A program made the translations under genes and the position numbers. A stretch of 63,225 nt of DNA, filler included, from Octopus bimaculoides (Eukaryota), in the NCBI RefSeq assembly GCF_001194135.2. It is 4 parts of 4 records of this genome, joined end to end, with 100 filler letters (N's around TTAATTAATTAA, not from the genome) between each part and the next. Parts side by side here need not be neighbours in the genome. Positions count along the whole stretch, not along the records: positions 39,359 to 58,952 come from NC_068984.1; 3 more parts are not named here. One strand, written 5' to 3'. This document shows positions 41,973 to 55,159 of the stretch, piece after piece (the stretch's first letter is position 1; the number at the start of each line of letters is the position of its first letter). Under the pieces are notes generated by a model. That model was not told where the DNA came from and made no database searches. It saw only the letters and a program-made list of their open reading frames with translations.

Positions 41973-44869
41973 TATGATAAGCAGATTGTTTTTGATGTTG
42001 ATCCTATATGAATACGGTAGCAACATTGCTTGAAAAGGATTGATGCGAGTGGTCTTCAAAAGGAAATTACAGCCATTGGCTTTACATAAAATATCCTACG
42101 GTCAGAATCAGTGGACTGTTTAGTTTACAATTTGTATCGCATACAAAGCTGATTGGATAAATAATATATTCGTTAATGTGCTTGCATTCTTGATGTTTTT
42201 CCCAAACCACCTCAGCTAATGACGAAAGAGTGTTCAGAAGCGAACACTCTTAAAGTACTCGCATATTGAAGAATTGCGTTTTCTTCCTGTATATTCTATC
42301 ACTGCAACAGCATAGCAGAAAACTTCCGATCCATATTATTAGGAAAAGGTTGAGTAGATTGCTTTTGTTTCACGTTTCTCTTTCAAGATACTATTAAAGG
42401 ACAAGGGAGTATTGGTAAGAGATCTCTTGTGAGTCTTTTTGAAGAAGAAATCTCTTGTGGATCTTTTTGAAGACACCATACTGTTGATTACAGAGAAGGG
42501 AAAGAGATTCAGAATAGTGGAAAACAACCGATAGTTTATGATGTTTTCTATTTTTGTAGAGATGCTGAAAGTTATGAGACAGTAATTTGTAGGGTGAAAG
42601 ATTTCTATATAGGACACGTTGTGTCTGTGTGTGTGAGTGTGTGAGTGTGTGTGTGTGTGTGTTTGTGTGTTTGTGTGTTTATATCAAAGGGTAAATACAC
42701 TTGGAGAAAAAGGGGTGGAGAGAAGGAGGGAGAAAAGGAGGAAAGAAAGAAAGTGGAAGAAAGAGGGGAAATAGAGTGGGAGAGAGAGGAGCTTAAATAT
42801 TTTTAATATTTGGTAAGGTGATAGGTCATGTCAGTATTGAAAATTATTTTGTTGGAATTCTTCAGGTACAGTTGTTTTATAGTAGTTAAGTGATCGATAA
42901 ATTTTTCAAACAACCTGGTGGTTGAGTGCAAAGAAGGTAAAGATTGTAGGCTTAAGAAGGAGATTCCATGAATTTATTTGTTGTGCGAGTGCAGTCTGAG
43001 ACAGAGATAACAACTAATGTAGAAATGATGTCTGCCTGAGAGCAGATTACAGAACCGTCTGGTTTGAGGACTGGTTGATAGGTTACTTCATTATTTCGGG
43101 TAAGGTGACAATACCTAGGTCACTCCTGACTAAGATGAGAATGGTGGAAAGAGTGAGCAGAAAGAGCAGCAAATTAGAAAATGAGAAAATATAGGGACAA
43201 GAAAGAAGGTGCACAAACACAAATTGTGTTTGTGTTTAATAAATATACAAAGAGATTCATCCACCCCTACTAGCTTTGCTCTGTTTAATGTCAAATTAAT
43301 TCGAATTGTGTACATTAGGAAGTCTCTACTTACCTCTAACAGAAACTCTTCAGCGAATAAAAGGTTAATTTAGTAGAAAAATATACCGAACATAAACGAA
43401 ATGCAGTCACTGAACATGGAAAAAGATATCAAAAATATTTTGCTGATTCTATTTGCGCTGCGTAGTTATTATTTGACCCTGTGTTAGCCATGACTGAGTA
43501 AATCTTCGAACAATGACTTCCGGTTGTGACCATCATGTCTTATTTCTAAACACAGAGTACTCTAGCTTCCAATGTGTATTTCCATAAAGAAAAAAACAAT
43601 TAAGTGTGATTTGTCTAACACATCACTAGAGCTTGGTTCATGTTTGCTTCTAAAGTTGAATCTCTACGATTCATTGGAATCCACTAATGTTTTGCTGATC
43701 ATTGATTCATATTTATTGAAAATTTAGTTAACTTCTTTAATTTTGATATTTAATTATTCTCTATTTTTCATATGTGAGAATTCGATCCCAGTAATCTATG
43801 TAATCAGGCTACTTTCTCAAACCAATGGAAGTAAGGCAGGAGAGGTTTGTCAAAGAATATAAACTCACGATTTTTCTGTCGAAAGATGGCAACTTATTCA
43901 CGCGGAAATTTTAAACTCATAAATTTCTTAAGTCGTAGATATAATACAAAGCTCGGGAAAGTATTCGTCTCTAAGTGGTCGTCTTCATAATGGCTAGAAG
44001 CAATAAATCGTTCAACATAAGAGAGATGTTACTAAAGAAATAGAGAAATCGGAATAAGAATTTTGTCGAAATATTATTATCTGTTTGTGATCGATAATCT
44101 GTCAGATTGGGCAAAAAAAAACCCCTCTGCAACACTGCATGTGAAACAGACAAATGATGTTTTTTAATAATAACATTTTTCAGATTTTATAAATTAAATA
44201 AATTGAATCAAGCTGGGTATCTAAACTAATCTCTATCACACCAACTTTTCTCGGTAAGGCTTTGGTGACATAATTAAAAAGAACACTTTTCTTCCTTTCT
44301 AATTAAACCCTAAAGAAAGTGGATTTTAAAATGTTAAACTGATAATTAGACAGCCTAATGAGTGACATCATGATTAGCTTGTTCTCGTAATTAGCAAAGA
44401 GCGTAAGATAGAAAGGATGATGATGAAAGAGCTGGGCTATTGGTTGTGATAGCTTTCTTCTTCGATTATAATAACACCTGCTGTTTCAAGTCCTTTCAAG
44501 ACAAAAATCAATAAACCAGTAAGCACACCTTTTCTCCTCGGTCAAGCGGTTTTTATATACTCTTAAAGAGAGCTTTGCAAATATTTGTTCATATATGTTA
44601 CTTTATATCTCGAGTGAGTATTTGTTGGGTGGTTTTGTTGTTTTAAAGTGTTTCTTCCAGCTTTTCACCAATCAAAATTTCTCTGATATATTTCTGCAGA
44701 ACTTTAAATAATTTTCATGATATACTTTCGAATGCATTGATTCTCTGGGAGTCAAACGTTCACTGTGAAATTAGATTAAACCTTCTCCGCAGATACTGAA
44801 AACAGAAAAAAAATCAAAAACGAAAGAAAACAACAAATCGGCTTAATTGTAAACTGAAAATCTTACAAG

Positions 44870-45194
44870 ATGACGCCATTTTCCTCCCTGGCAGTTATAT
44901 TATTACTATCAATATTTCAAGATGCCGAAACAAACAACCAATCAAAACAAAAGATATTCTACTCAATGCCATCTTACCGATTCTATTCCCCACCTGGTTC
45001 ACGCGATGATTTAGGAACATATCCTTGCGAATCTGCTCAACACGGAACAATGATTTGTCTTTCTGTGCAAAGTTGTTGCTGTTTCGTTTTTAAAAAGAAT
45101 AGGAATCCTTCATGTAAGTTATACAGTTTCCTTCCGGAATATGGATCGTCTTTAGAATATGACTCCAATTACCAGCTGTATTACTCTTTAGAAG
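44870..45194 (+). CDS. Exon 1 (coding) of a 293-aa secreted protein: signal peptide plus PAN/Apple-like module
   Basis: ATG at 44870 follows an in-frame TGA at 44855-44857. It reads MTPFSSLAVILLLSIFQDAET (hydrophobic N-terminus)...YPCESAQHGTMICLSVQSCCCFVFKKNRNPSCKLYS...YYSLE, then G|gtaagg. 325 nt, phase 1, matching the next exon. A candidate 5'UTR acceptor ccttctccgcag ends at 44792. Confidence 0.85.
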
Positions 45195-45339
45195 GTAAGG
45201 ATTACTAAAATACAGTTTGTAATTTGTTGAAAAGGATTACTGTACTTATTGCACTTCTTAAATTTTTAAATTTCAAAAGCTATATTATTGAAAAAAAATC
45301 CTAAAAAGAAACTGACATATATGTATCTGGGTAGTAATA

Positions 45340-45545
45340 ATCTTTTTTACTATAGACCTGAAATTTTGGGGGAGGGGGTCTTGTCGTTTAGATCGGCCTC
45401 CAGTGCTCAACTGGTATTTATTTTATCGATCTCAAAATGACGAAAGGAAAAGTCGACCTGGGTGGAATTTGAACTCAGAAAATAAAGACGGACAAAATAC
45501 CGCTAAGCATTTTTGTCCGGAGTACTAACAATTCTTCCAGATCGC
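45340..45545 (-). mobile_element. SINE family B in intron 1
   Basis: aaagtcgacctgggtggaatttgaactcagaa...ccgctaagcatttt. Confidence 0.8.
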
Positions 45546-46767
45546 TGCCTTTGAATAAAGTCGTAATAATGAAAAATGACGCGCCCACCCTGCAATACTT
45601 GTCTTGCTCTGAATGCTGGCAACCCAGGCTATGTCATCAGCTAAGATTTCTCACGACAGTGTCTAATAAAGAAACATTAAATCCACTATCTGATTATTCA
45701 AGGTAACACATAAAGTCTGATTATACAAGATAAGATTCAATTTTTGTATATATAAGATAAAATCAAATTTATTTAAGATACAAACTTACACAATGTCTTG
45801 GCAGTGTTAAATCTACTAAATGAATTTAATATCACCTCATTGTTTAGTGAAAGTAAAATTTTAACCATTGTATATTTGACACAAAATGAAATTTACTGTA
45901 CTTTTTAAAAACTGTTGTCTGCATATTTAAGTGAACCAGTGAATCATAGATTGTCGCTTCATACCCTGCAGGTATGCAACAACAACAATTACAGCGGTAA
46001 CAACAATAATAAGGATCCTTTCTACTGTGAAACACATTTCTGGAATACCTTTTCACGGTCTTCAAAAGTCATCAGGACACATGTCCAGAAAGGCCCTTCC
46101 ACCTAGATACAGGTTTCGATACAGTGCCTTAAAAATGACAAGCCAACTGTCAACGTCTTCTCTGACGTCTTTTATGGTGATCTTCGGATTACTTCAGTCC
46201 ATATTTTGTGGGAATTAGCTTATGAGCAGACCTGTGAAGTGCTAGTTTACCGTGTCTTCTCGCTCTGTCCTCAGTTTTAAACAGGAGACATGTATTTCCA
46301 CATGGTGTGTCCTACTCGATAGAAGAGATCGTACCCCACATATCGGCTAGATCTACTTCCAGTAGTCCTTTCAGGAAGGTACAAGGAAAGCATCTACAAC
46401 TTTCTAGATGAGAAAATAATTTAGTTCTTTCCTTTCTGATGACTTCGAGAAAACATGCACTTGCTTTGGTTTTATTGTGCTGTCACAATAGTTCAACCTT
46501 CAGCGAGATTACCTACTGCAAACATTTGTCTATTGCTTGTAGCGTTAGCGAAGGACGAACATTTTAGATATACGCTTTTGTTTGGGAAAATGTATGTGTA
46601 GTTAAATATTTTGTTTTCAGACGTGTCGTCGGAATTGTTCACATCAATTTTATTGTCTACAGAAGTGTCATTGTTTTCTTTTCTTTTCTTTTATTTTGTG
46701 CGAGTCTTTCTGTAAAATATCCTTGCTAGTCTTTTTCCTTTGAAATATTCTAAGTTTTCAGTATTAT

Positions 46768-46828
<61 letters not shown>

Positions 46829-46858
46829 CACGACGACGACGACAACGATGATGATTAA

Positions 46859-46917
<59 letters not shown>

Positions 46918-46927
46918 CAACAACAAC

Positions 46928-47155
46928 ATGTCTCAGAGAAATCCAAAAGATTGTACTGACAAGTACTGCCCCACATCCTGAGAAAAACCCTATCAATTTA
47001 AATGTCTGTGTTGTATTACATGAAGATATTTCGCTACTTCCCCCTTCCCAAGCTTTCAATCATACTGTAACATCTCTTATCCATCACTCGCCCCAGGACA
47101 CTGGGTGTGTCTCGGCAAGTGACTGTAACAAACATGCAGATTAAAAGTAAAAAGT
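46928..47155 (+). mobile_element. R4/Dong-type 3' end after (TAA)n
   Basis: CLREIQKIVLTSTA.H, with the 3'UTR motif gtctcggcaag. Confidence 0.65.
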
Positions 47156-47202
47156 AATAATAATAATAGCTATTATTATTATCATCATTATTGTTGTTGT
47201 TG

Positions 47203-47292
<90 letters not shown>

Positions 47293-47294
<2 letters not shown>

Positions 47295-47433
47295 TTATGT
47301 TTGACTTTTGCTTTGCATTTGTACAAGTTGGATCCAAGTCTCACCCAGAGACCTCAAGAGACAACAAGTCAGAAGTTCATGTAGGTGTTATGCCTAAGGT
47401 ACCATATATTTGGATTTGTACATAGTTTTGTTC
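47293..47433 (-). mobile_element. Probable LINE 3' end inserted in (TTA)n in opposite orientation
   Basis: A 140-bp unique segment flanked by (TTA)n on both sides; the minus strand ends ...aaagtcaaacataaaataataat. Clade not established. Confidence 0.45.
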
Positions 47434-47461
<28 letters not shown>

Positions 47462-47464
<3 letters not shown>

Positions 47465-47900
47465 GATCAAAATGAGTATTCCTTGTGATCATAATATCTG
47501 GCAAAAGGGGTTTGACTAAGCTCAGAAAATATAGAGATTTGCTAATCGAAATCTAAAAAGATTTCACATCTCAAGGCGATGAGAATACCAGTAATTGTAG
47601 CAGCACTAGGAATGATAAAAAAACAGGAACGGAATAGATATTTGAGAATGATCCCTGGCTTATCATCTTTGCAAGAAGTGCAAAAGATTGTCTTAACCGA
47701 CACGTTACACGTATTTTGAAGAGCATTGATGCTTATCATCCATTTAATTTTTTTTTTCACATAACTTTATTTGATTTTGTAAATGAACAATCAGGCGTGT
47801 TTATTTTAATGGCCTATCAATGTATACAGTGAGTTTCTTTGCCCTAGGGGTCGGATAAACACTCGGCAAGAAATGGAAACAGAACTGAAAGAAGAAGAAA
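47462..47900 (+). mobile_element. R4/Dong-type 3' end, same family as 37620-38243
   Basis: Shares taccagtaattgtag.agcact.ggaatgataaaaaaa and the 3'UTR atggcct..caatgt.ta.agt.agtttct.tgcccta...actcggcaagaaatggaaacagaactgaaagaaga. Confidence 0.85.
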
Positions 47901-47955
47901 AAAATTAATAATAATAATAATGATAATAATAATAATTATAATAATAAAAATATTC

Positions 47956-48160
47956 AGATAAATACATAAAAAAAAACACCAGGACTTACAAATATATATA
48001 ACATACAGAAAATTGCACTACTGGGCACTGCACACATCCTACGCAAAACACTTTCAATACAGTAACCATAAAGAGCATCACAGCAAACCACAGCACGTAC
48101 CCAAGGCACACAGAGCTGCGCTCGGTAGTGAAGTGAAAGCACTCTATAAAAATAAAACTA

Positions 48161-48163
<3 letters not shown>
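47956..48163 (+). mobile_element. R4/Dong-type 3' end, same tail as the 53793 copy
   Basis: DKYIKKTPGLTNIYNIQKIALLGTAHILRKTLSIQ*. The tail tataaaaataaaactactg-(AAT)n also occurs at 54463-54483. Confidence 0.85.
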
Positions 48164-48246
<83 letters not shown>

Positions 48247-48322
48247 AGAAACAATGTCAAAAATATTTTCTTTGAGCTTCATTTAGCATCTGTTTTAACG
48301 GAAAATAGCATTTGTTTTGTAG

Positions 48323-48495
48323 ATCACAAACATAGTTGGATACAAGTGTTTGAATCCGTCGCTGGCACAAGCAGAAACCCTTATGAACTATATAACTCAC
48401 CTTTGAGCGGAGTGTGGAAGGCATCCAATAACTATTCACTTAGTGTCTTTAAAAGTTCTTTGATTGAAAATTGGGCTTCGCTTCACGTGCAAGAG
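48323..48495 (+). CDS. Exon 2 of the PAN-like plus unknown-domain gene
   Basis: Acceptor gcatttgttttgtag, donor GAG|gtattt. 173 nt, phase 1 to 0. Reads (D)HKHSWIQVFESVAGTSRNPYELYNSPLSGVWKASNNYSLSVFKSSLIENWASLHVQE with no stops. Confidence 0.9.
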
Positions 48496-48571
48496 GTATT
48501 TCATTCAATTCTACAACTATATAACTCTACGTACATATCTATCTATCTATCTGTCTTCCTATCTCTCTATA

Positions 48572-48604
<33 letters not shown>

Positions 48605-48679
48605 GTCTGTCTGTCTGTCTGTCTGTCTGCCTGTCNNNNNNNNNNNNNNNNNNNNNNNNNNNNNNNNNNNTATATATAT

Positions 48680-48713
<34 letters not shown>

Positions 48714-49405
48714 ATACAAAAATGGGACAAGGATGCAAAACATCCAGACAGTTAGGTGAAACAAAAAAGGGACAACAAAATATCCAGACAGACGATACAA
48801 GGAAAACAAGGACGGATCATTCGGAGTTTTCTATCCTCAGTCGAGTTCCTGATTACCTATGCAATTTCGGCTGGTTATATATATATACATATATATACAC
48901 ACACATAGGTGTAAGAAGAACAAGCAGTTGTGTGTGTGTATACATATAAAATTTCAGGGTTCAAAAGAATCAGGTACTTAAATACTAAAGCACCAAGATC
49001 AGGGCGGTGATATCACTATCATGTACAAATAATGTTTCAGTGCAAATACGTACTTACTAAAGTAAACACGGATTTGTACTTCGGTTGTGCGTACAATCAC
49101 AAATGGCCGATTGAATATACAACGAGTCGTCAAGCTAGCACATGGGAACACTCGCTGCACCCTTTGCACTGCACTCAATAGACTCTAGAAAAAAAAAGCG
49201 AATTGCAGGTTCCGAGTTAGGTGAATGATAAACAAATAACAACAAATAAATTGTGGTTCACTACAGCTGTTTCAGACATACTTTTATATTGATGAATAGA
49301 AAACTTTTGTTTTTTTTATGCATGATGTAATATTTCTATTCATCAATGAAAAACATGTTTGAAACAGCTGTAGTGAACCACATTTCATCTGTGTTATTTA
49401 TGTAT

Positions 49406-49469
<64 letters not shown>

Positions 49470-49633
49470 ATGTATCAAAGTCTCTGCTTGTAAATGAGCA
49501 ACTGTTCGTAAACATCTGAGGAAAGGCTTTGTTTCTGATTACCATTGTACATGACTATTCAATTCTATGTGTTTTAATTAACAGCCTTTTTTTTACCAAG
49601 GTCGTGGCTTATCATATCCAATAATATTTCCAG

Positions 49634-49797
49634 GTTAAATTCGTTCTTGAGCAAGACAATCAAATAGTGGTGAGTATGATATTTGATGGAAAACAGAGCA
49701 ACAAAATGAACTGGTTTTGCCTCAATCGTCTGATTAAATCGTCGCCTTGGACTGACCTTAAGACAAATAAACCTAGTATTTTTAGTATAATCGGAGA
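49634..49797 (+). CDS. Exon 3 of the PAN-like plus unknown-domain gene
   Basis: Acceptor aataatatttccag, donor GA|gtgagt. 164 nt, phase 0 to 2. Reads VKFVLEQDNQIVVSMIFDGKQSNKMNWFCLNRLIKSSPWTDLKTNKPSIFSIIG. Confidence 0.92.
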
Positions 49798-50047
49798 GTG
49801 AGTATATATATTGTTTACTAATAAATCAACATCTTTTTTTGTTTGTTTTGATAGTCAGTTAAGTCCAGTCTACAAATACTTTAGACCAACAATTAGGTTG
49901 ACAAATATAGGAAGTACAAGTTTTACAAAGAAAATTTATCTGCTTACACACACACACNNNNNNNNNNNNNNNNNNNNNNNNNNNNNNNNNNNNNNNNNNN
50001 NNNNNNNNNNNNNNNNNNNNNNNNNNNNNNNNNCACACACATTTATA

Positions 50048-50837
50048 AAGATTATAAATCTGGAAAAGTACAGGTCAAGTTATTACATCTGGTAAAGTAC
50101 AGAACAAGAAAATTTTTACTTAAAATATTGCAGCTAAGGATAAAATTTGAATATAAAAAATTATTTGATTTTAATTTACAAAGTAACATCATAATTACAA
50201 AAGGTACCATCATTTTGTTGAAATATTGACACACTAGAATACTTTAAAAAATGAGAGCTAGAAGTACCAATATAGCTAAAATTTTATGCAAAGTAGAATA
50301 GTATATATGGTAGGCAAATTCATTATGTTTTAAATTGACATTGGGTCAAGACTAAAAATGTGAAAAATTGGCAATACCTTGAGCAATAATTCGAGCAAAT
50401 TTTACTGTGAATTTGTTGTTATAGGTAGATTTTATTGTAATATATAACTAATTTTTGCATTATTCCATTTATTGTACTAACTAATTATGTATTACTATTA
50501 TTTTTTATAAGCTATTTTCAAATTTCTAATTAATAATCTTTATAAAATGCAAAAAATATTTTGAGTTATTTTTACTTTACAATAGAAGTAAGAAATAATA
50601 ACAAATAGAAGTAATAACTTGTAATAAAATTTTTAGTTTTAATAAAAGCTAATATTTTCTAGATCTAAATATTTTATTTGAAATTTTATCCTTAGCTGCA
50701 ATTTTTACGTAAAAATTTTCTTGTTCTGTACTTTACAAGATGTAAACACTTGTCCTGAACTTTTCCGAGTGTCCTGTACTTTTCCGAGTGTCCTGTACTT
50801 TTCCGAGTATACTGTACTTTTCCAGATTTATAATCTT
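50048..50837. mobile_element. Foldback/MITE-like element with long terminal inverted repeats in intron 3
   Basis: 50048-~50160 is inverse to ~50668-50837. The right arm has a 19-bp unit gtcctgtacttttccgagt three times plus a partial fourth. Confidence 0.8.
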
Positions 50838-50954
50838 AAGACTATTATTTCTCTTGCTCACATTTTTCCATGTAATTATATAATATATAAACCCTACAGT
50901 TATCGAACTTCAATTTTCTTCAATACCAAAACAACTTCGAACTTTTTTTTTCAG

Positions 50955-51127
50955 AGATTCTATTTACAAAAGACGGTTTTATATCAATAAGGAATACGGC
51001 CGCTGTAAAAAGGATGTAGGCTGGCTTCTGGTCAGAGACGATAAAAAGGGCATGGTTTGTTCCTTTGCAGCCTCTAAATTTCCAATCTTCTTATTTTCTC
51101 CGGTGAAAACCTCCACTTATCTTGAAG
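50955..51127 (+). CDS. Exon 4 of the PAN-like plus unknown-domain gene
   Basis: Acceptor actttttttttcag, donor G|gtgagt. 173 nt, phase 2 to 1. Reads (E)DSIYKRRFYINKEYGRCKKDVGWLLVRDDKKGMVCSFAASKFPIFLFSPVKTSTYLE. Confidence 0.92.
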
Positions 51128-51689
51128 GTGAGTCTATATTTGAGTTTATCACTTCCACCTACCATCGCCACAAACATACACATTACTGATCCAGCCATTT
51201 CAGCAGGCTGAGGTCGTTGATATTCTTTTGTAAGAAAATAAACAACACAAACTCTGCTAAGAAATTCACAGCAGGCATGGATGTTTGCTTAAGAATTGCA
51301 CCTCGTGACTTCGTGGGTTCAATTCAACTGTGCGGCATATTTCACAACCGAAGCGTTGAGACTGGAATTTAGTAGACTGAAACTGTGTGGAAGCGGGTCA
51401 GGTGGACCTTTCTTGTTGAATGGTAGACTTAAGCTGTTACCTTCTCTAAGCAGACTCTACTTAGTTGCAAGCATTTAGGCCAGGACCTCTGGTTTCAGGA
51501 GACTCGGACCTCTCTTCCATTCACCTGTCTCAAGGATTCTGGAAAAGAGCATGAATGTTGACCTTCGCATTTGAATACCCAGGCTAAGTACCTTCTTCCA
51601 GTTGTGGAATCCAGTCGAAGCCACCAGTTTAGAGTCGGCCATTCAATCAGCCCTCAACCATTTTAACAACCACAACAACAACAACAATC

Positions 51690-51830
51690 CTTTCTACTAT
51701 AGACATAAGGCTTGAGGTTTTGGGGGAAGGGCTACTCGATTATATCGATCCCACTGCACATCTGGTACTTACTTTATCAACCCTGAAAGGTTAAAAGGCA
51801 AAATGGACCTCAGCGAAATTTGAACTCAGG
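51690..51830 (-). mobile_element. SINE family B in intron 4
   Basis: atcctttctactatagacataaggc...ggtacttactttatc...aaatttgaactcag. Confidence 0.75.
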
Positions 51831-51839
51831 ACGTACATT

Positions 51840-53420
51840 AAGTCTGGTACTGGTGTGGCTGCTGTTGAGGAAGATCTTTAAGTATTTGTTTTCCTTCGTA
51901 TCTCTTCCTTCTGGTCATACCTGCCAGTTTTTTTGTGTTGATGTCGGTATTGGTTTATTTCTTTTTCTTTTGTTCGATCTCCGAACCTTTTCCCACTTTG
52001 GCTCTTCCTGCTCCTCCTCACCGCAGGACATGTCTGATTGCTCTGAACACGGGAGGAGAAAATCTTGCGGAGCTTTTTGTGGTTTTTCTGTTGATAAATT
52101 TTGTGTTGTTGTTTTGAGCGATTCTGATGCTGTTGTTTTTGCTGCTGTCGATGTTGGTTATTTTTCTACAGTTGTTTCCATTGTTGGTTTTGGTGTTGTT
52201 GCTGCTACTGCTGTCGGTGCTTCTGTGATTGCAGTTGTTGCTACTACTGTTGTCTTTGCAGCTGCAGTTGCTTGCTTCTGCTGTTGTTGTTGTGGTTGTG
52301 GTGGTGAAGATGGTGATAGTGGTGGTGGTGGTGGTAGTGGTGGAAGTAGTGGTGTTAGCTAAAACGAAGGTCTCTCTTCTCTTTTTTTTGTTGTTGTGGG
52401 CAGAAGGCCTTTAGATAGTTTGTGCCCCGCACAGGTGACATTTTGGTTTTCTGCCCGCGATAGCCACGTGAAGTTTTGTGGCATCCAGTAGACTTATGTA
52501 ATCCGGGATAGCCTCAACGCTTTTCTGGTCAGCTTGTATTAAAAGCTGCATCCCTTGACCTAACCAGTTCTGCTTGTGAATCTTTTGTATCCGTAGAATC
52601 TTGGTTTTCTTTTCTATGTCAAGGAGAATAGCAGCCACTAACCAGCAGATGTCAATCTCTGATGGGATGTTCAGTATTCTAAATAGGAATGAGGTAAATA
52701 GGAATGAGAATTATTTCATCACTCGTTAGGGTAGCTGTCGTGTGATTTTTTGCTTTCTCCTCTGAGGCGAACCTTACCTCGATAGTCCCATATTTCTTCC
52801 CCCGGGCATATAGGTCTTGCTCTTCCACATCGGTTTTAAGCATTTCTCTATTTCTTTCTGTGTTGCCTGTTATACTTCCCTGATTTTCGCCAATTGTTTT
52901 AAATAGAACTCTCCGTAAATTAATGTCTTGCTGGACAGTTCTAGGAATGTTTAGTACCACATTTCTGTCACATTTCTCCAACATGCATTTTGTATTCTTG
53001 AACTCATTTTCATCTAAATAAAATATCTTCACTTACTTGTCGAGTCGCTTACGCAAAGTTGAAACTGGTCCGACTGGATTTGCATGCTTCGATTTCGTTG
53101 TTTTCTTTTTTTTTTTTCGTTAATTATGTTGGTAATGGTGGTGGTGGTGTTGGATCTGCTGCTGGCACCAGGGGTAGCGGTGGAGGTGGCAGTGTTTTCA
53201 CTTGTGTTGTTGCTTTTCATCATTTTCTTTTGTTCTTGCGATGGTGAAGGGGAGATCAAAAGCAAGTGAAATTAATTTTCATATGTTTCATGTGTGCTAT
53301 TGTTCTTGTTGTTGCTATAGCAGTCGTTATCTTTCACGACTTGGCTGTTCTCTCTTCCGGACAACTGGCTGTTCTTATCAGCAAACGGACAGTTTTCGAT
53401 CTTTGATTTTAGCAAAAACA
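51840..53420 (-). mobile_element. Tx1/L1-type LINE ORF1 (gag-like) relic with 5'UTR, no ORF2
   Basis: Frameshifted ...LYARGKKYGTIEVRFASEEKAK (RRM-like) and VAIAGRKPKCHLCGAQT (zinc-knuckle start), then a low-complexity tail ending ...PHQYQT*. Confidence 0.6.
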
Positions 53421-53792
53421 AAAAAACAAAAACAAAAAAAAAGAAGAAGAAGAGGGATGTCTTAGCCCAAACAAACACTAAAATAGTCTCTAAGGGCTAC
53501 AGATGGAGAAGAACTAACCAGTTTCCCAAGGTCCTGGTTTGTTTAACAAAGTAACAATAACAAATGTACGATGTGTAACAATGTATAACAATACGAATAA
53601 CAGTAAAACTTACGGAGCAATGTGCAGCAAGTGTCGACAGACGAACAATAACTACAACAGTAACAACAACAATAATAATCCTTTCTACTATAGGCACAAG
53701 GCCTGATAGTTTGGGGGAGGGGGCCAGTCGATTAAATCGACTCCAAAGGGATGAAAGGTAAAGTCGACTTCGGCGGAATTTGAACTCAGAAC

Positions 53793-54483
53793 GGCTGCCC
53801 AGTCCTGGCTAAGAAGGAATATATTCACAGACACGACAGAGCTGGGACCTATATACACTGGAAGCTATGCCAACATTATGGAATAGCAACAGAAAAAAGA
53901 TGGTATAAACACACGCCAGAAAAGGTCACAGAAAACGAGAAAGCAACCATACTCTGGGATATGCCAATACACACAGATAGAGAAATTAAGGCAAATAGAC
54001 CAGATATAGTTGTCAAAGATCATGAAGGAAAAAAATGCCTTCTAATTGATGTTTCAATACCAGCAGATGATAACGTTTCTCTAAAAGAAATGGAAAAACT
54101 TTCAAAATACAAAGACCTGGAAATAGAGATAACTCGAATGTGGAATCTNNNNNNNNNNNNNNNNNNNNNNNNNNNNNNNNNNNNNNNNNNNNNNNNNNNN
54201 NNNNNNNNNNNNNNNNNNNNNNNNNNNNNNNNNNNNNNNNNNNNNNNNNNNNNNNNNNNNNNNNNNNNNNNNNNNNNNNNNNNNNNNNNNNNNNNNNNNN
54301 NNNNNNNNNNNNNNNNNNNNNNNNNNNNNNNNNNNNNNNNNNNNNNNNNNNNNNNNNNNNNNNNNNNNNNNNNNNNNNNNNNNNNNNNNNNNNNNNNNNN
54401 NNNNNNNNNNNNNNNNNNNNNNNNNNNNNNNNNNNNNNNNNNNNNNNNNNNNNNNNNNNNNNGTTATAAAAATAAAACTACTG
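53793..54483 (+). mobile_element. R4/Dong-type LINE 3' portion with an open reading frame up to the gap
   Basis: GCPVLAKKEYIHRHDRAGTYIHWKLCQHYG...ATILWDMPIHTDREIKANRPDIVVKD...IDVSIP...KLSKYKDLEIEITRMW; the tail runs into (AAT)n. Confidence 0.9.
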
Positions 54484-54529
54484 AATAATAATAATAATAA
54501 TAATAATAATGATAATAATAATAATAATT

Positions 54530-54890
54530 CCTACTATAGGCACAAGGCCTGGAACTTTTGGTGGGGAGAATAGTAGTCGATTACATCGACCCCAGAGCTC
54601 AAATGGCTGTTATTTTTTCGATCCCGAAAATATGGAAGGCAAAGACAACATTTGCAATATTTGGACTCAGAACCTAAAGAAATGCTTTGAAAAATACTAT
54701 TAAGCATTTTGTCCGATACGCTGATGATTCCGCTAGCTCGGTTTCTGACGGAGGCACAACGCCAAGAATTTTTAAGGGCGAGTTTGAGTCAATACCATCG
54801 GTCAGAAGTCTTGGACTGGTACCTCTATTTTATCAAAGGATGAAAGTCAAAACTGACTTCAGCAGTATTTAAACTCAGAACGGAAAGAGT
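54530..54890 (-). mobile_element. Two degenerate SINE family B copies just upstream of exon 5
   Basis: cctactataggcacaaggcct...taagcattttgtccg; the second has ggtacctctattttatc...aaactcagaacg. Confidence 0.7.
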
Positions 54891-54979
54891 TGGAATAAAT
54901 AAAACTAATTAAAACGTAAGTTAAAAGAACTAAAGCCTTTTTGAGCTTCTCATAAGTATATTTTTTTCTCTCTTTCCAG

Positions 54980-55026
54980 AATATGACAGCGCTGACAAAA
55001 TTATTATCTCCATCAAAATTCGTTAA
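54980..55026 (+). CDS. Exon 5 (terminal coding) of the PAN-like plus unknown-domain gene
   Basis: Strong acceptor tttttttctctctttccag, phase 1. Reads (E)YDSADKIIISIKIR then TAA at 55024-55026. Total CDS is 325+173+164+173+47=882 nt, or 293 aa plus stop. Confidence 0.88.
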
Positions 55027-55090
55027 ACCTGAAGTACAAAAGCAGAGAGCAAGAAAATGGATTCAACTAACCAGTAGAATTAGTAAAGTG

Positions 55091-55096
55091 AATAAA
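55091..55096 (+). terminator. Candidate polyadenylation signal of the gene
   Basis: AATAAA about 65 nt after the stop. In AT-rich DNA this could be chance. Confidence 0.4.
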
Positions 55097-55159
55097 CTAT
55101 GAATTAGAAGAGGAAAAGTGATTAGCAGATATTATGAACATGCACACACGCGAGCGCGC

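What the first reader, a model, noticed from the sequence alone, without database searches (positions are those of the whole stretch)
44870..55026. Hidden intact five-exon gene for a secreted PAN/Apple-like plus unknown-domain protein (293 aa)
Seen in the sequence: five GT-AG exons with matching phases (1,0,2,1), no stops, an in-frame stop before the ATG, a hydrophobic N-terminus and two N-glycosylation sequons (NQS, NYS). The protein is MTPFSSLAVILLLSIFQDAET...CESAQHGTMICLSVQSCCCFVFKKNRNPSCKL...WIQVFESVAG...KSSLIENW...VKFVL...IFDG...NWF...RLIKSSPWTDL...FSIIG...RRFYINKEYGRCKKDVGWLLV...C...PIFLFS...ADKIIISIK. From recall, the C-terminal ~185 aa matches a motif series that recurs in mollusc and cnidarian uncharacterised secreted proteins, often fused to PAN or EGF modules; I know no gene name or function for it. 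The PAN-like part is atypical: the usual C-x3-C has Gly in place of the first Cys, and there is an extra upstream Cys and a CCC triplet. Inference: a secreted recognition or effector protein (lectin-like, mucus, venom or immune). It is the only intact host gene I found and is largely invisible in the ORF track.
Basis: partly seen in the sequence, partly recalled or inferred. Interest (0 to 1): 0.8.

Follow-up and report, generated by a model that had tools for sequence, protein, structure and literature searches.

The report
Unannotated octopus PAN plus fibrinogen-like gene
The five-exon gene is real and intact: it encodes a probably secreted 293-residue protein with a PAN/Apple domain joined to a widespread, unnamed domain that looks like a very divergent relative of fibrinogen-type and intelectin-type lectin domains, and no function has been tested for it.

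Summary
Exons 44870-45194, 48323-48495, 49634-49797, 50955-51127 and 54980-55026 (+ strand) all have GT-AG borders and phases 1,0,2,1. They splice to an 882-nt ORF of 293 aa. All three N gaps lie in introns. The locus is collinear with the gap-free Octopus sinensis locus, where all five exons and splice sites are intact (dN/dS 0.41, p about 0.009). An annotated paralogue has introns at the same positions. RNA support is thin but exact: one read joins exon 3 to exon 4, and a contig from a related species plus two reads join exon 4 to exon 5. No near-identical full-length protein is in the public protein collection. The O. sinensis model stops after exon 3.

The N-terminal domain folds as PAN/Apple (TM 0.71-0.73 to the HGF N domain) but has Gly where the first core Cys should be. 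The C-terminal 180 residues have no Pfam, NCBIfam or PDB sequence match. They belong to a large family (688 cluster representatives) found in molluscs, a nemertean, a flatworm, echinoderms, a hemichordate, amphioxus and Myxococcota. In some members this domain follows directly on a canonical fibrinogen-type 'YCDM..GGGWT' subdomain, and its weak fold matches are almost all fibrinogen-related domains and intelectin. My best reading is a secreted lectin-like recognition protein. The function is inferred, not shown.

The parts
44770..44869 (+). 5' UTR (minimum extent). The leftmost RNA read starts near 44770. An in-frame TGA lies at 44855-44857.
   Evidence: X9 read depth begins at about 44770, and the X1 contig runs from 44835. 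Upstream stop.
44870..45194 (+). Exon 1 (325 nt, ends in phase 1). Encodes residues 1-108: the hydrophobic N-terminus (probable signal peptide, residues about 1-20) and the PAN/Apple-like domain.
   Evidence: 91% aa identity to the start of O. sinensis LOC118763188. X9 reads and the X1 contig lie on it.
44951..45193 (+). PAN/Apple-like domain (residues about 28-108). Cys53, Cys63, Cys69-71 and Cys82, with Gly59 in place of the first core Cys.
   Evidence: AF2 model with pLDDT 76-92 over this part. Foldseek: HGF N domain 3hms TMt 0.73 at rmsd 2.3 and 3hmr TMt 0.71, plus plasminogen PAN, factor XI apple and SML-2. Viral PAN proteins also match. Alignment.
48323..48495 (+). Exon 2 (173 nt, ends in phase 0). 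Start of the C-terminal domain: W114-I-Q-V-F ... H-V-Q-E.
   Evidence: Same junctions as the O. sinensis RefSeq-derived protein P0001. The paralogue's intron is at the same place. No RNA reads were found in the sampled runs.
49634..49797 (+). Exon 3 (164 nt, ends in phase 2). If the donor at 49797|GT is not used, a TGA follows at once, which is how the O. sinensis 219-aa model ends.
   Evidence: One 150-nt X9 read fits 49677-49797 and then continues with 29 nt that fit 50955-50983.
50955..51127 (+). Exon 4 (173 nt, ends in phase 1). Encodes RRFYINKEYGRCKKDVGWLLV ... C256, the most conserved core of the family.
   Evidence: 82% aa identity in O. sinensis with intact AG/GT. The X36 contig fits 50962-51127 and stops exactly at the donor.
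54980..55026 (+). Exon 5 (47 nt including TAA at 55024-55026). Encodes ..YDSADKIIISIKIR, the family's C-terminal 'AD..A[IV]F[IV]K' strand.
   Evidence: The same 295-nt X36 contig continues from exon 4 into 54978/54980-55108. Three X9 reads begin at the acceptor and there is no depth in the intron.
48337..55017 (+). C-terminal domain (residues 114-291, spliced from exons 2-5). It is the body of an unnamed fibrinogen-related-like family.
   Evidence: Family HMM positions 1-177 are covered at E 3.7e-55. 688 relatives. Fold and bridge evidence.
55027..55133 (+). 3' UTR (minimum extent).
   Evidence: The X36 contig reaches 55108 and an X9 read reaches about 55133.

Best explanation
This is a functional, weakly expressed, five-exon protein-coding gene. 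It is missing from the source species' public protein set, and its O. sinensis orthologue is annotated only in truncated form.

The product has three parts. There is an N-terminal hydrophobic leader, probably a signal peptide. Next comes a PAN/Apple-fold domain with a rearranged cysteine set. Last is a 180-residue globular domain of a large unnamed family.

That family is best understood as the body of a very divergent fibrinogen-related domain, corresponding to the part after the 'GGGWT' strand. In some bacterial and animal members it is still preceded by the canonical fibrinogen/intelectin-type A subdomain. In the octopus and many other lophotrochozoan members the A subdomain is gone and a PAN/Apple module sits in front instead.

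Fibrinogen-related domains, intelectins and PAN/Apple modules are known binding modules for carbohydrate, acetyl groups or protein. By analogy, the most likely role is a secreted soluble recognition protein, lectin-like, acting in mucus, innate immunity or the extracellular matrix.

Shown: the gene structure, its conservation, its transcription and splicing, both folds, family membership, and the sequence bridge to fibrinogen-type A subdomains. Inferred: secretion, homology of the body itself to fibrinogen B/P subdomains, and ligand binding.
For: Gene.
- Canonical splice sites and an open frame.
- The O. sinensis locus keeps all five exons, all eight splice dinucleotides and the frame. Its only indel is an in-frame 6 bp. 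There are 15 synonymous and 25 non-synonymous differences, dN/dS 0.41, binomial p 0.009.
- Paralogue LOC118768521 has five exons with introns at the homologous positions.
- Junction 3-4: one X9 read.
- Junction 4-5: a 295-nt X36 contig from a related species, plus X9 reads.
- Exon 1 and the 5'UTR are transcribed.

PAN domain. Foldseek TMt is 0.71-0.73 to the HGF N domain. Relatives pass the Pfam PAN_1 threshold, for example P0031 at 32.8 bits against a 21.4 cut-off.

Family. 688 hits. The nearly invariant W114, W159, F183, W193, D207, F216, R227, F229, C238, D241, G243, W244 and C256 are all present.

Fibrinogen link.
- The domain model has pLDDT 94.5. Its best 50 PDB fold matches are almost all fibrinogen-related domains or intelectin-1.
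- In members P0018, P0043, P0046, P0057, P0060, P0063, P0098, P0115 and P0118, the motif '..YCDM..GGGWTMVFK' runs straight into the family's first strand.
- Exactly there, Pfam Fibrinogen_C matches profile positions 2-62 of 221, COLFI matches positions 20-97 of 233, and NCBIfam GGGWT_bact also hits.
- A profile of these bridge members finds lamprey and Xenopus intelectins, fibrinogen beta, tachylectin 5A, tenascin and FIBCD1 at E 3e-11 to 1e-4.
- UniProt names one member 'Fibrinogen C-terminal domain-containing protein'.
Against: - RNA support is only a handful of reads. There are none on exon 2, and no RNA run of the source species up to 2025 holds exon 1 or exon 2 words.
- dN/dS of 0.41 is only moderate constraint. 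Exon divergence (about 4.6%) is not far below intron divergence (about 5-13%).
- The link of the body to fibrinogen B/P subdomains is weak. Foldseek E values are 0.14-1.3 and TM is at most 0.40. hhalign against a small fibrinogen-domain profile found nothing. All sequence matches to fibrinogen-type proteins end about 25 residues after the GGGWT strand.
- The octopus protein itself lacks the A subdomain and gets no Fibrinogen_C, COLFI or GGGWT hit.
- The signal peptide was not tested with a dedicated predictor. The leader has no basic residue before the hydrophobic core.
- No member of the family has a tested function.
Confidence: 0.6

Rival explanations
1. The true product is the truncated 219-residue protein (exons 1-3, stop right after the unused exon-3 donor), as annotated in O. 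sinensis. Exons 4-5 would then be relics.
For: The only public model of the orthologue, P0001, ends '...FSIVGE' at that stop. Only one read shows the 3-4 junction in the source species.
Against: Exons 4-5 are intact with conserved splice sites in two species, and a third species' RNA contig reads in frame through them. They encode the most conserved core of the family: R227, F229, C238, D241, G243, W244 and C256. The paralogue's full model includes the homologous exons. A 219-aa product would hold only about 60% of the domain.
Confidence: 0.08
2. It is a young or decaying paralogue (a transcribed pseudogene in the making) with background transcription only, and no longer has a function.
For: Expression is very low and patchy. 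dN/dS is 0.41. The canonical first PAN cysteine is lost, and there is an unpaired-looking Cys set (nine Cys, with C195 not conserved).
Against: No stop or frameshift appears in either octopus species despite 40 substitutions. The single indel is in frame. Synonymous changes are significantly in excess (p 0.009). The unusual Cys pattern is itself conserved between species. All family-invariant residues are kept.
Confidence: 0.12
3. It is a secreted effector (a salivary, venom or skin toxin-like protein) or a structural matrix or mucus component rather than a recognition lectin. The two domains would serve adhesion or polymer building.
For: Family members occur in large extracellular mosaic proteins with ZP, EGF, Sushi, TSP1, C-type lectin and Kringle modules, and with bacterial surface-protein repeats. 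PAN/Apple modules often mediate protein-protein contacts.
Against: Nothing ties this gene to a venom gland or to matrix. The tissue of the runs is not given. The small two-domain soluble layout resembles soluble lectins more than matrix proteins.
Confidence: 0.2

Closest known systems
PAN/Apple domains (Pfam PAN_1 PF00024: HGF N domain, plasminogen PAN, factor XI/prekallikrein apple, apicomplexan SML-2/MIC lectins, leech antiplatelet protein)
   Same: The predicted fold of residues about 28-108 superposes on the HGF N domain (TMt 0.71-0.73, rmsd 2.3-3.2 over 83-89 columns). The helix is followed by a central strand carrying the '..C..FV[FY]..' motif. Related family members pass the Pfam PAN_1 threshold.
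   Different: The octopus protein gets no Pfam PAN hit even at E<=10. The first Cys of the core C-x3-C is Gly59. There is an extra Cys53 upstream and a CCC triplet at 69-71, so the disulfide pattern must differ.
Fibrinogen-related domains (Pfam Fibrinogen_C PF00147: fibrinogen beta/gamma, ficolins, angiopoietins, tenascin, FIBCD1, tachylectin 5A)
   Same: In bridge members the family's first strand (W-x-[LMV]-V-[FY]-K) is the fibrinogen 'GGWT[VI][IF]Q' strand, directly preceded by a canonical A subdomain. Nearly all best fold matches of the body are fibrinogen-related domains. Both have a Cys ... G-W ... Cys loop late in the domain (seen by eye in the sequences; an inference).
   Different: The octopus protein has no A subdomain. 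There is no HMM or profile-profile match over the body. Fold scores are below significance (TM at most 0.40). The Asp-rich calcium loop of fibrinogen-type domains is not evident.
Intelectins / X-type lectins (human ITLN1, Xenopus XEEL, lamprey serum lectin)
   Same: The evolutionary pattern is the same: a fibrinogen-type A subdomain with 'CDMT..GGGWTLV' followed by a body that fibrinogen profiles do not recognise. The bridge-member profile hits lamprey lectin 7e1e (E 2.6e-11) and XEEL (5.5e-11) best. Intelectin-1 is the second-best fold match of the body (prob 0.57).
   Different: The body is about 180 residues, against about 230 in intelectins, and shows no detectable sequence similarity to them. 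The fold match covers only about 110 columns at TM 0.28.
NCBIfam NF040941 GGGWT_bact, 'fibrinogen-like YCDxxxxGGGW domain-containing protein'
   Same: The bacterial and metagenomic family members P0018, P0046, P0115 and P0118, and the animal-like P0043 and P0098, carry this 46-position domain immediately before the family body.
   Different: The NCBIfam model covers only the A subdomain and stops where the octopus domain begins. The octopus protein has no match to it.
Octopus paralogues LOC106873068, LOC106884519 (O. bimaculoides) and LOC118764338, LOC118768521 (O. sinensis), all 'uncharacterized'
   Same: Same size (284-296 aa), same leader plus PAN-like plus body layout, and same five-exon structure.
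   Different: They are only about 26-36% identical to this protein and have a different subset of PAN cysteines. They are annotated, and this gene is not.

Membership tests
Unnamed 'W-x-LVF ... AD..AIF.K' domain family (no Pfam/NCBIfam model) | Full-length match to the family profile | tested here: met
   The HMM built from 84 members is covered at positions 1-177 by residues 114-291, E 3.7e-55. The window protein is one of the 84. Independent phmmer gives 688 hits, with best non-octopus E 4.5e-113.
Unnamed 'W-x-LVF ... AD..AIF.K' domain family (no Pfam/NCBIfam model) | Nearly invariant residues (W, W, F, W, D, F, R-x-F, C, D-x-G-W, C) | tested here: met
   W114, W159, F183, W193, D207, F216, R227, F229, C238, D241, G243, W244 and C256 are all present and all kept in O. 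sinensis.
PAN/Apple domain | PAN fold (helix packed on a curved antiparallel sheet) | tested here: met
   Foldseek: 3hms TMt 0.73 at rmsd 2.3, 3hmr TMt 0.71, plasminogen 4dur at rmsd 1.8 over 79 columns. Viral PAN proteins match at E 1e-4. This is a predicted structure with pLDDT 76-92.
PAN/Apple domain | Match to Pfam PAN_1/PAN_4 above the gathering score | tested here: not met
   0 Pfam families at E<=10 for the octopus protein. 10 of 84 relatives match PAN_1, and P0031 is above the cut-off.
PAN/Apple domain | Four core cysteines, C-x3-C ... C ... C (two disulfides) | tested here: not met
   Gly59 replaces the first Cys. Cys63, Cys69-71 and Cys82 align with the other three. Cys53 is extra. 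Whether Cys53 substitutes for the missing one cannot be told from sequence.
Fibrinogen-related domain (Fibrinogen_C) | HMM match to PF00147 over the whole domain | tested here: not met
   No hit for the octopus protein. In relatives only profile positions 2-62 of 221 match. hhalign of the body against five fibrinogen-type domains gives probability 0.1.
Fibrinogen-related domain (Fibrinogen_C) | A subdomain with 'YCDM..GGGWT' | tested here: not met
   Absent in the octopus protein, where a PAN domain precedes W114. Present in 15 of 178 full domain copies among the relatives held.
Fibrinogen-related domain (Fibrinogen_C) | B/P-subdomain fold of the body | tested here: inconclusive
   Foldseek best hits are ANGPTL3, ficolins, fibrinogen, ANGPTL6 and FGL1, but E is 0.14-1.3 and TMq 0.2-0.40. 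The model used is the homologue P0038, not the octopus protein itself.
Fibrinogen-related domain (Fibrinogen_C) | Calcium site and acetyl/ligand pocket residues in the P subdomain | not tested
   No coordinates were available for mapping, and no reliable residue-level alignment to fibrinogen-type domains was obtained.
Intelectin (X-type lectin) | Intelectin body with its calcium/exocyclic-diol site | tested here: inconclusive
   4wmq is the second fold hit (prob 0.57, 113 columns, TMq 0.28). There is no sequence match of the body.
Secreted protein | Cleavable N-terminal signal peptide | tested here: inconclusive
   Residues 6-16 are the most hydrophobic window (mean Kyte-Doolittle 2.85). They are predicted helical at residues 5-17. 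Paralogues have similar leaders. No signal-peptide predictor was on hand.

The most novel reading that the evidence does not exclude
The C-terminal domain represents an unrecognised, ancient branch of the fibrinogen/intelectin lectin superfamily, shared by Myxococcota and many invertebrate phyla. Its ligand-binding body has become a free-standing module that can work without the A subdomain. In lophotrochozoans it has been re-fitted with a PAN/Apple module to give a new class of soluble pattern-recognition lectins.
Probability: 0.3. Interest if true: 0.65.

Novelty: new variant of a known kind. Interest (0 to 1): 0.45.

Why it matters
It adds a real gene that current annotation misses, and it corrects a truncated model in a sister species.

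More broadly, it flags a domain family with hundreds of divergent members across at least six animal phyla and bacteria. That family has no Pfam or NCBIfam model and no tested function. The report gives it a first anchor: it is the body that follows the fibrinogen/intelectin-type 'GGGWT' subdomain. This turns 'unknown domain' into a testable lectin hypothesis using glycan arrays, microbe binding and a structure.

It could also widen the catalogue of invertebrate innate-immune recognition molecules beyond FREPs, ficolin-like proteins and intelectins. The interest is moderate. Nothing here overturns current views, and the function is still inferred.

Tried and rejected
- Pfam, NCBIfam and PDB sequence searches with the octopus protein gave no hit. 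The weak PDB sequence hits (tweety, C9orf72; E 0.2-0.9) were rejected as chance.
- The word-indexed protein search found only the O. sinensis orthologue. With a family alignment it found 11 proteins, all unnamed.
- A profile of the whole family against PDB sequences gave only chance hits (midasin).
- hhalign of the family body against five fibrinogen-type domains found nothing.
- The viral fold library returned only PAN proteins and said nothing about the body.
I folded the domain-only homologue P0038 instead.
I then used short stretches.
- Exon 2 had no reads in X1, X8, X9 or X10 and no RNA run holding it.
- X2, X3 and X4, which hold the exons, turned out to be DNA-like because their contigs cover introns. 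They give no splicing evidence.
- Literature searches for the LOC identifiers and for DUF7922 gave 0 papers. A search on fibrinogen-related/intelectin terms gave nothing on this family.
- No second copy of the gene lies in the piece or in the 32-kb O. sinensis locus.
- COLFI as the closest relative was rejected. Collagen C-propeptide structures are not among the best 50 fold matches, and the COLFI match covers only the A subdomain and the short stretch just after the GGGWT strand.

Full report
OBSERVATION

The exons are 44870-45194, 48323-48495, 49634-49797, 50955-51127 and 54980-55026 on the + strand. Every exon is flanked by AG and GT. The lengths (325, 173, 164, 173 and 47 nt) give intron phases 1, 0, 2, 1. 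The spliced CDS is 882 nt and encodes 293 residues followed by TAA. An in-frame TGA lies five codons before the ATG.

GAPS

The three N gaps lie in introns 2, 3 and 4. A blastn comparison with the gap-free O. sinensis locus L001 shows the same order and orientation on both sides of each gap. The sizes do differ.
- The O. sinensis sequence between the blocks flanking gaps 1 and 2 is about 1.2 and 1.5 kb. The window has 240 and 84 positions there, so intron sequence is probably missing.
- Gap 3 sits inside about 3 kb of repeat-rich sequence that O. sinensis lacks.
No coding sequence is missing. The family profile is covered from position 1 to 177 by residues 114-291. RNA crosses introns 3 and 4 directly.

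IS IT A GENE?

Orthologue. The only close protein in 5.8 billion is O. sinensis LOC118763188 (P0001). It has 219 aa at 91% identity and ends '...FSIVGE'. That end is the stop codon that follows the exon-3 donor if the donor is not used. In the O. sinensis genome, exons 4 and 5 are present and open, with conserved AG/GT. The full five-exon ORF there is 291 aa. The two CDS differ by 15 synonymous and 25 non-synonymous changes and one in-frame 6-bp indel. That gives dS 0.09, dN 0.037 and dN/dS 0.41, a synonymous excess with p 0.009.

Paralogue. The annotated paralogue LOC118768521 (P0162, 284 aa) has five exons with introns at the homologous positions...E|VK.V....FSI.G.|D.., and ...|.Y..AD.

RNA.
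- In the RNA run X9 of the source species, one 150-nt read fits 49677-49797 and its other 29 nt fit 50955-50983. This is the 3-4 junction.
- Two reads end at 51127, and reads start at the exon-5 acceptor with no depth in the intron.
- Four reads lie on the 5'UTR and exon 1, starting from about 44770.
- In run X36, from a related species, a 295-nt contig fits 50962-51127 and then 54978/54980-55108. The letters before 54980 are the end of exon 4. Its differences from both the window and O. sinensis keep the frame, so a third species supports exons 4-5.
- Exon 2 had no reads in the sampled 6% of the runs, and no RNA run holds it.
- Expression is therefore low or restricted. Junctions 1-2 and 2-3 rest on the O. 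sinensis model, the paralogue and homology.

THE PROTEIN

phmmer against 1.84 billion cluster representatives found 688 proteins at E<=1e-3 and 273 at E<=1e-10. All matches are to residues from about 110 to 293. Several 250-320-residue proteins match from about residue 12 to 292, so they share the whole architecture. None carries a functional name. Sources confirmed by look-up are:
- octopuses, bivalves and gastropods;
- a nemertean (Lineus);
- a flatworm (Macrostomum);
- a starfish and a crinoid;
- Ptychodera (a hemichordate);
- three Branchiostoma species;
- a Myxococcota bacterium.

The domain occurs singly or in up to four tandem copies. It occurs together with ZP, EGF, Sushi, C-type lectin, TSP1, Kringle, SUEL lectin and PAN modules.

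N-TERMINAL DOMAIN

The AlphaFold2 model of the whole protein has mean pLDDT 84.9. It matches PAN/Apple structures over residues about 28-108:
- HGF N domain, TMt 0.71-0.73;
- plasminogen PAN;
- factor XI apple;
- Sarcocystis SML-2;
- leech antiplatelet protein;
- giant-virus PAN proteins.
Pfam finds no PAN match in the octopus protein, but it does in 10 of 84 relatives. Gly59 sits where the first Cys of C-x3-C belongs. Cys63, Cys69-71 and Cys82 align with the remaining core cysteines. Cys53 is extra. This odd set is conserved in O. sinensis.

C-TERMINAL DOMAIN

There is no Pfam, NCBIfam or PDB sequence match. I folded the domain-only homologue P0038 with an 84-sequence alignment instead, which gave pLDDT 94.5 and pTM 0.91. 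Its best 50 PDB fold matches are almost all fibrinogen-related domains (ANGPTL3, ficolins, fibrinogen, ANGPTL6, FGL1, MFAP4, tenascin-R) and intelectin-1. All are weak, with E 0.14-1.3 and TM at most 0.40.

Independent sequence evidence ties the family to that superfamily. In nine of the relatives held, a canonical A subdomain ('SC.d....G...dGvY.IdP......f.VYCDM..GGGWTmVyK') runs directly into the family's first strand, which in the octopus is W114-I-Q-V-F. The following all match exactly there and stop about 25 residues after the W:
- Pfam Fibrinogen_C, profile positions 2-62 of 221;
- COLFI, profile positions 20-97 of 233;
- NCBIfam GGGWT_bact, 'fibrinogen-like YCDxxxxGGGW domain'.

A profile of these bridge segments hits lamprey and Xenopus intelectins, fibrinogen beta, tachylectin 5A, tenascin, FIBCD1 and intelectin-1 at E 2.6e-11 to 1e-4. 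Again only the A subdomain and the first strand align. UniProt labels one member 'Fibrinogen C-terminal domain-containing protein'.

A profile-profile test of the body against five fibrinogen-type domains was negative. The body's homology to the B/P subdomains is therefore an inference from position and weak fold similarity, not a demonstrated fact. The situation parallels intelectins, whose body is likewise invisible to fibrinogen profiles.

MECHANISM

Shown: a spliced, conserved gene, a PAN fold, and membership of the unnamed family whose other members carry a fibrinogen-type A subdomain.

Inferred: the leader is a signal peptide, and the product is a soluble two-module binding protein. Its divergent fibrinogen-like body provides the ligand site, and the PAN module gives a second contact or oligomerisation surface, as in other PAN and fibrinogen-type lectins. 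I put 0.9 on the gene model, about 0.75 on secretion, about 0.55 on true fibrinogen-superfamily descent of the body, and about 0.4 on a lectin-like recognition role.

Rivals are a truncated 219-aa product, a decaying paralogue, and an effector or matrix role. They are listed with their tests in the rival explanations.

NOVELTY

The gene is unannotated in the source species, which is probably Octopus bimaculoides. I infer that from the 2015 DNA and RNA runs and from the 91% identity to O. sinensis. The species name was not given to me. The O. sinensis model is truncated. The family is large, unnamed and unstudied: literature searches for the LOC identifiers and DUF7922 found no papers, and a search on fibrinogen-related/intelectin terms found nothing on this family. 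The PAN plus A-less fibrinogen-like body architecture is, as far as these tools show, undescribed. It is a new variant within known kinds of extracellular binding modules, not a new kind of system.

Noticed in passing
window 44798-44927: Two of the four X9 RNA reads on exon 1 stop fitting at about 44926/44927 (GATGCCG|AAACAA, no GT) and continue with at least 20 unlike letters. Another read and the X1 contig read straight through. The cause could be one chimeric fragment, an allele with an insertion, or a related 5' end elsewhere. The tool does not print loose letters for so few reads.
   Followed up: no
L001 22066-22071 (O. sinensis) / window 49796-49801: The O. sinensis public model LOC118763188 (219 aa) ends at the TGA that follows the unused exon-3 donor. 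Exons 4 and 5 lie intact 2.5 and 3.8 kb downstream, so that model is truncated.
   Followed up: yes
window 50048-50877 (intron 3): A very high-copy element with long inverted arms. Arms 50048-50073 and 50812-50837 are 100% complementary, and arms 50062-50125 and 50703-50766 are 91% complementary. Contig word depth in DNA runs of several octopus species is 10^3-10^5 against about 6-26 for the flanks. It is also present in RNA contigs. It looks like a MITE-type transposon.
   Followed up: partly
window 51352-54466 (intron 4), especially 53793-54148: About 3 kb that is absent from the O. sinensis intron. It includes a repeat with the ORF fragment MPIHTDREIKANRPDIVVKDHEGKKCLLIDVSIPADDNVSLKEMEKLSKYKDLEIEITRMWN, cut by the N gap. 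Two copies at 93-94% identity lie in intron 1 of the O. sinensis gene (L001 14406-14761 and 18327-18681). It is probably a retroelement tail.
   Followed up: partly
window 48427-48432 (residues N144-Y145) and residue C195 (49712-49714): The NYS sequon is lost in O. sinensis through an in-frame 6-bp deletion, while O. sinensis gains an NHS sequon near residue 78. Cys195 is Ser in O. sinensis, so neither feature is conserved.
   Followed up: yes
relatives P0018, P0046, P0063, P0115, P0118: The same body domain occurs in giant bacterial-type surface proteins. These include a Myxococcota protein with TIG and 'choice-of-anchor Z' repeats, and others with FG-GAP, PKD and Big_9 repeats. In each the body is preceded by NCBIfam GGGWT_bact. 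The family therefore spans bacteria and animals, and the direction of any transfer is unknown.
   Followed up: partly
relative P0002 (amphioxus, 1211 aa), residues 459-490: Pfam DUF7922 (PF25538) gives a summed 32-bit match. Its best stretch (profile positions 94-125 of 136) falls on the 'V.L....V...F.G.....WFS..RL' part of one of four copies of the domain. It may be a partial Pfam model of a related family. No other member tested showed it, and no paper mentions it.
   Followed up: partly
window 46768-47298, 48164-48245, 48536-48628, 49408-49468: Long pure microsatellites lie in introns 1 and 2: (TGA)20, (AAT)19, (TAT)43, (AAT)27, (TATC)23 and (GT)30.
   Followed up: no
window exons 1, 3, 4, 5 in run X9: All reads on the exons are of the 'first mate on +' class. 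In the commonest stranded protocol that would mean a minus-strand RNA, but the GT-AG junctions are on the + strand. The library convention is not known to me.
   Followed up: no
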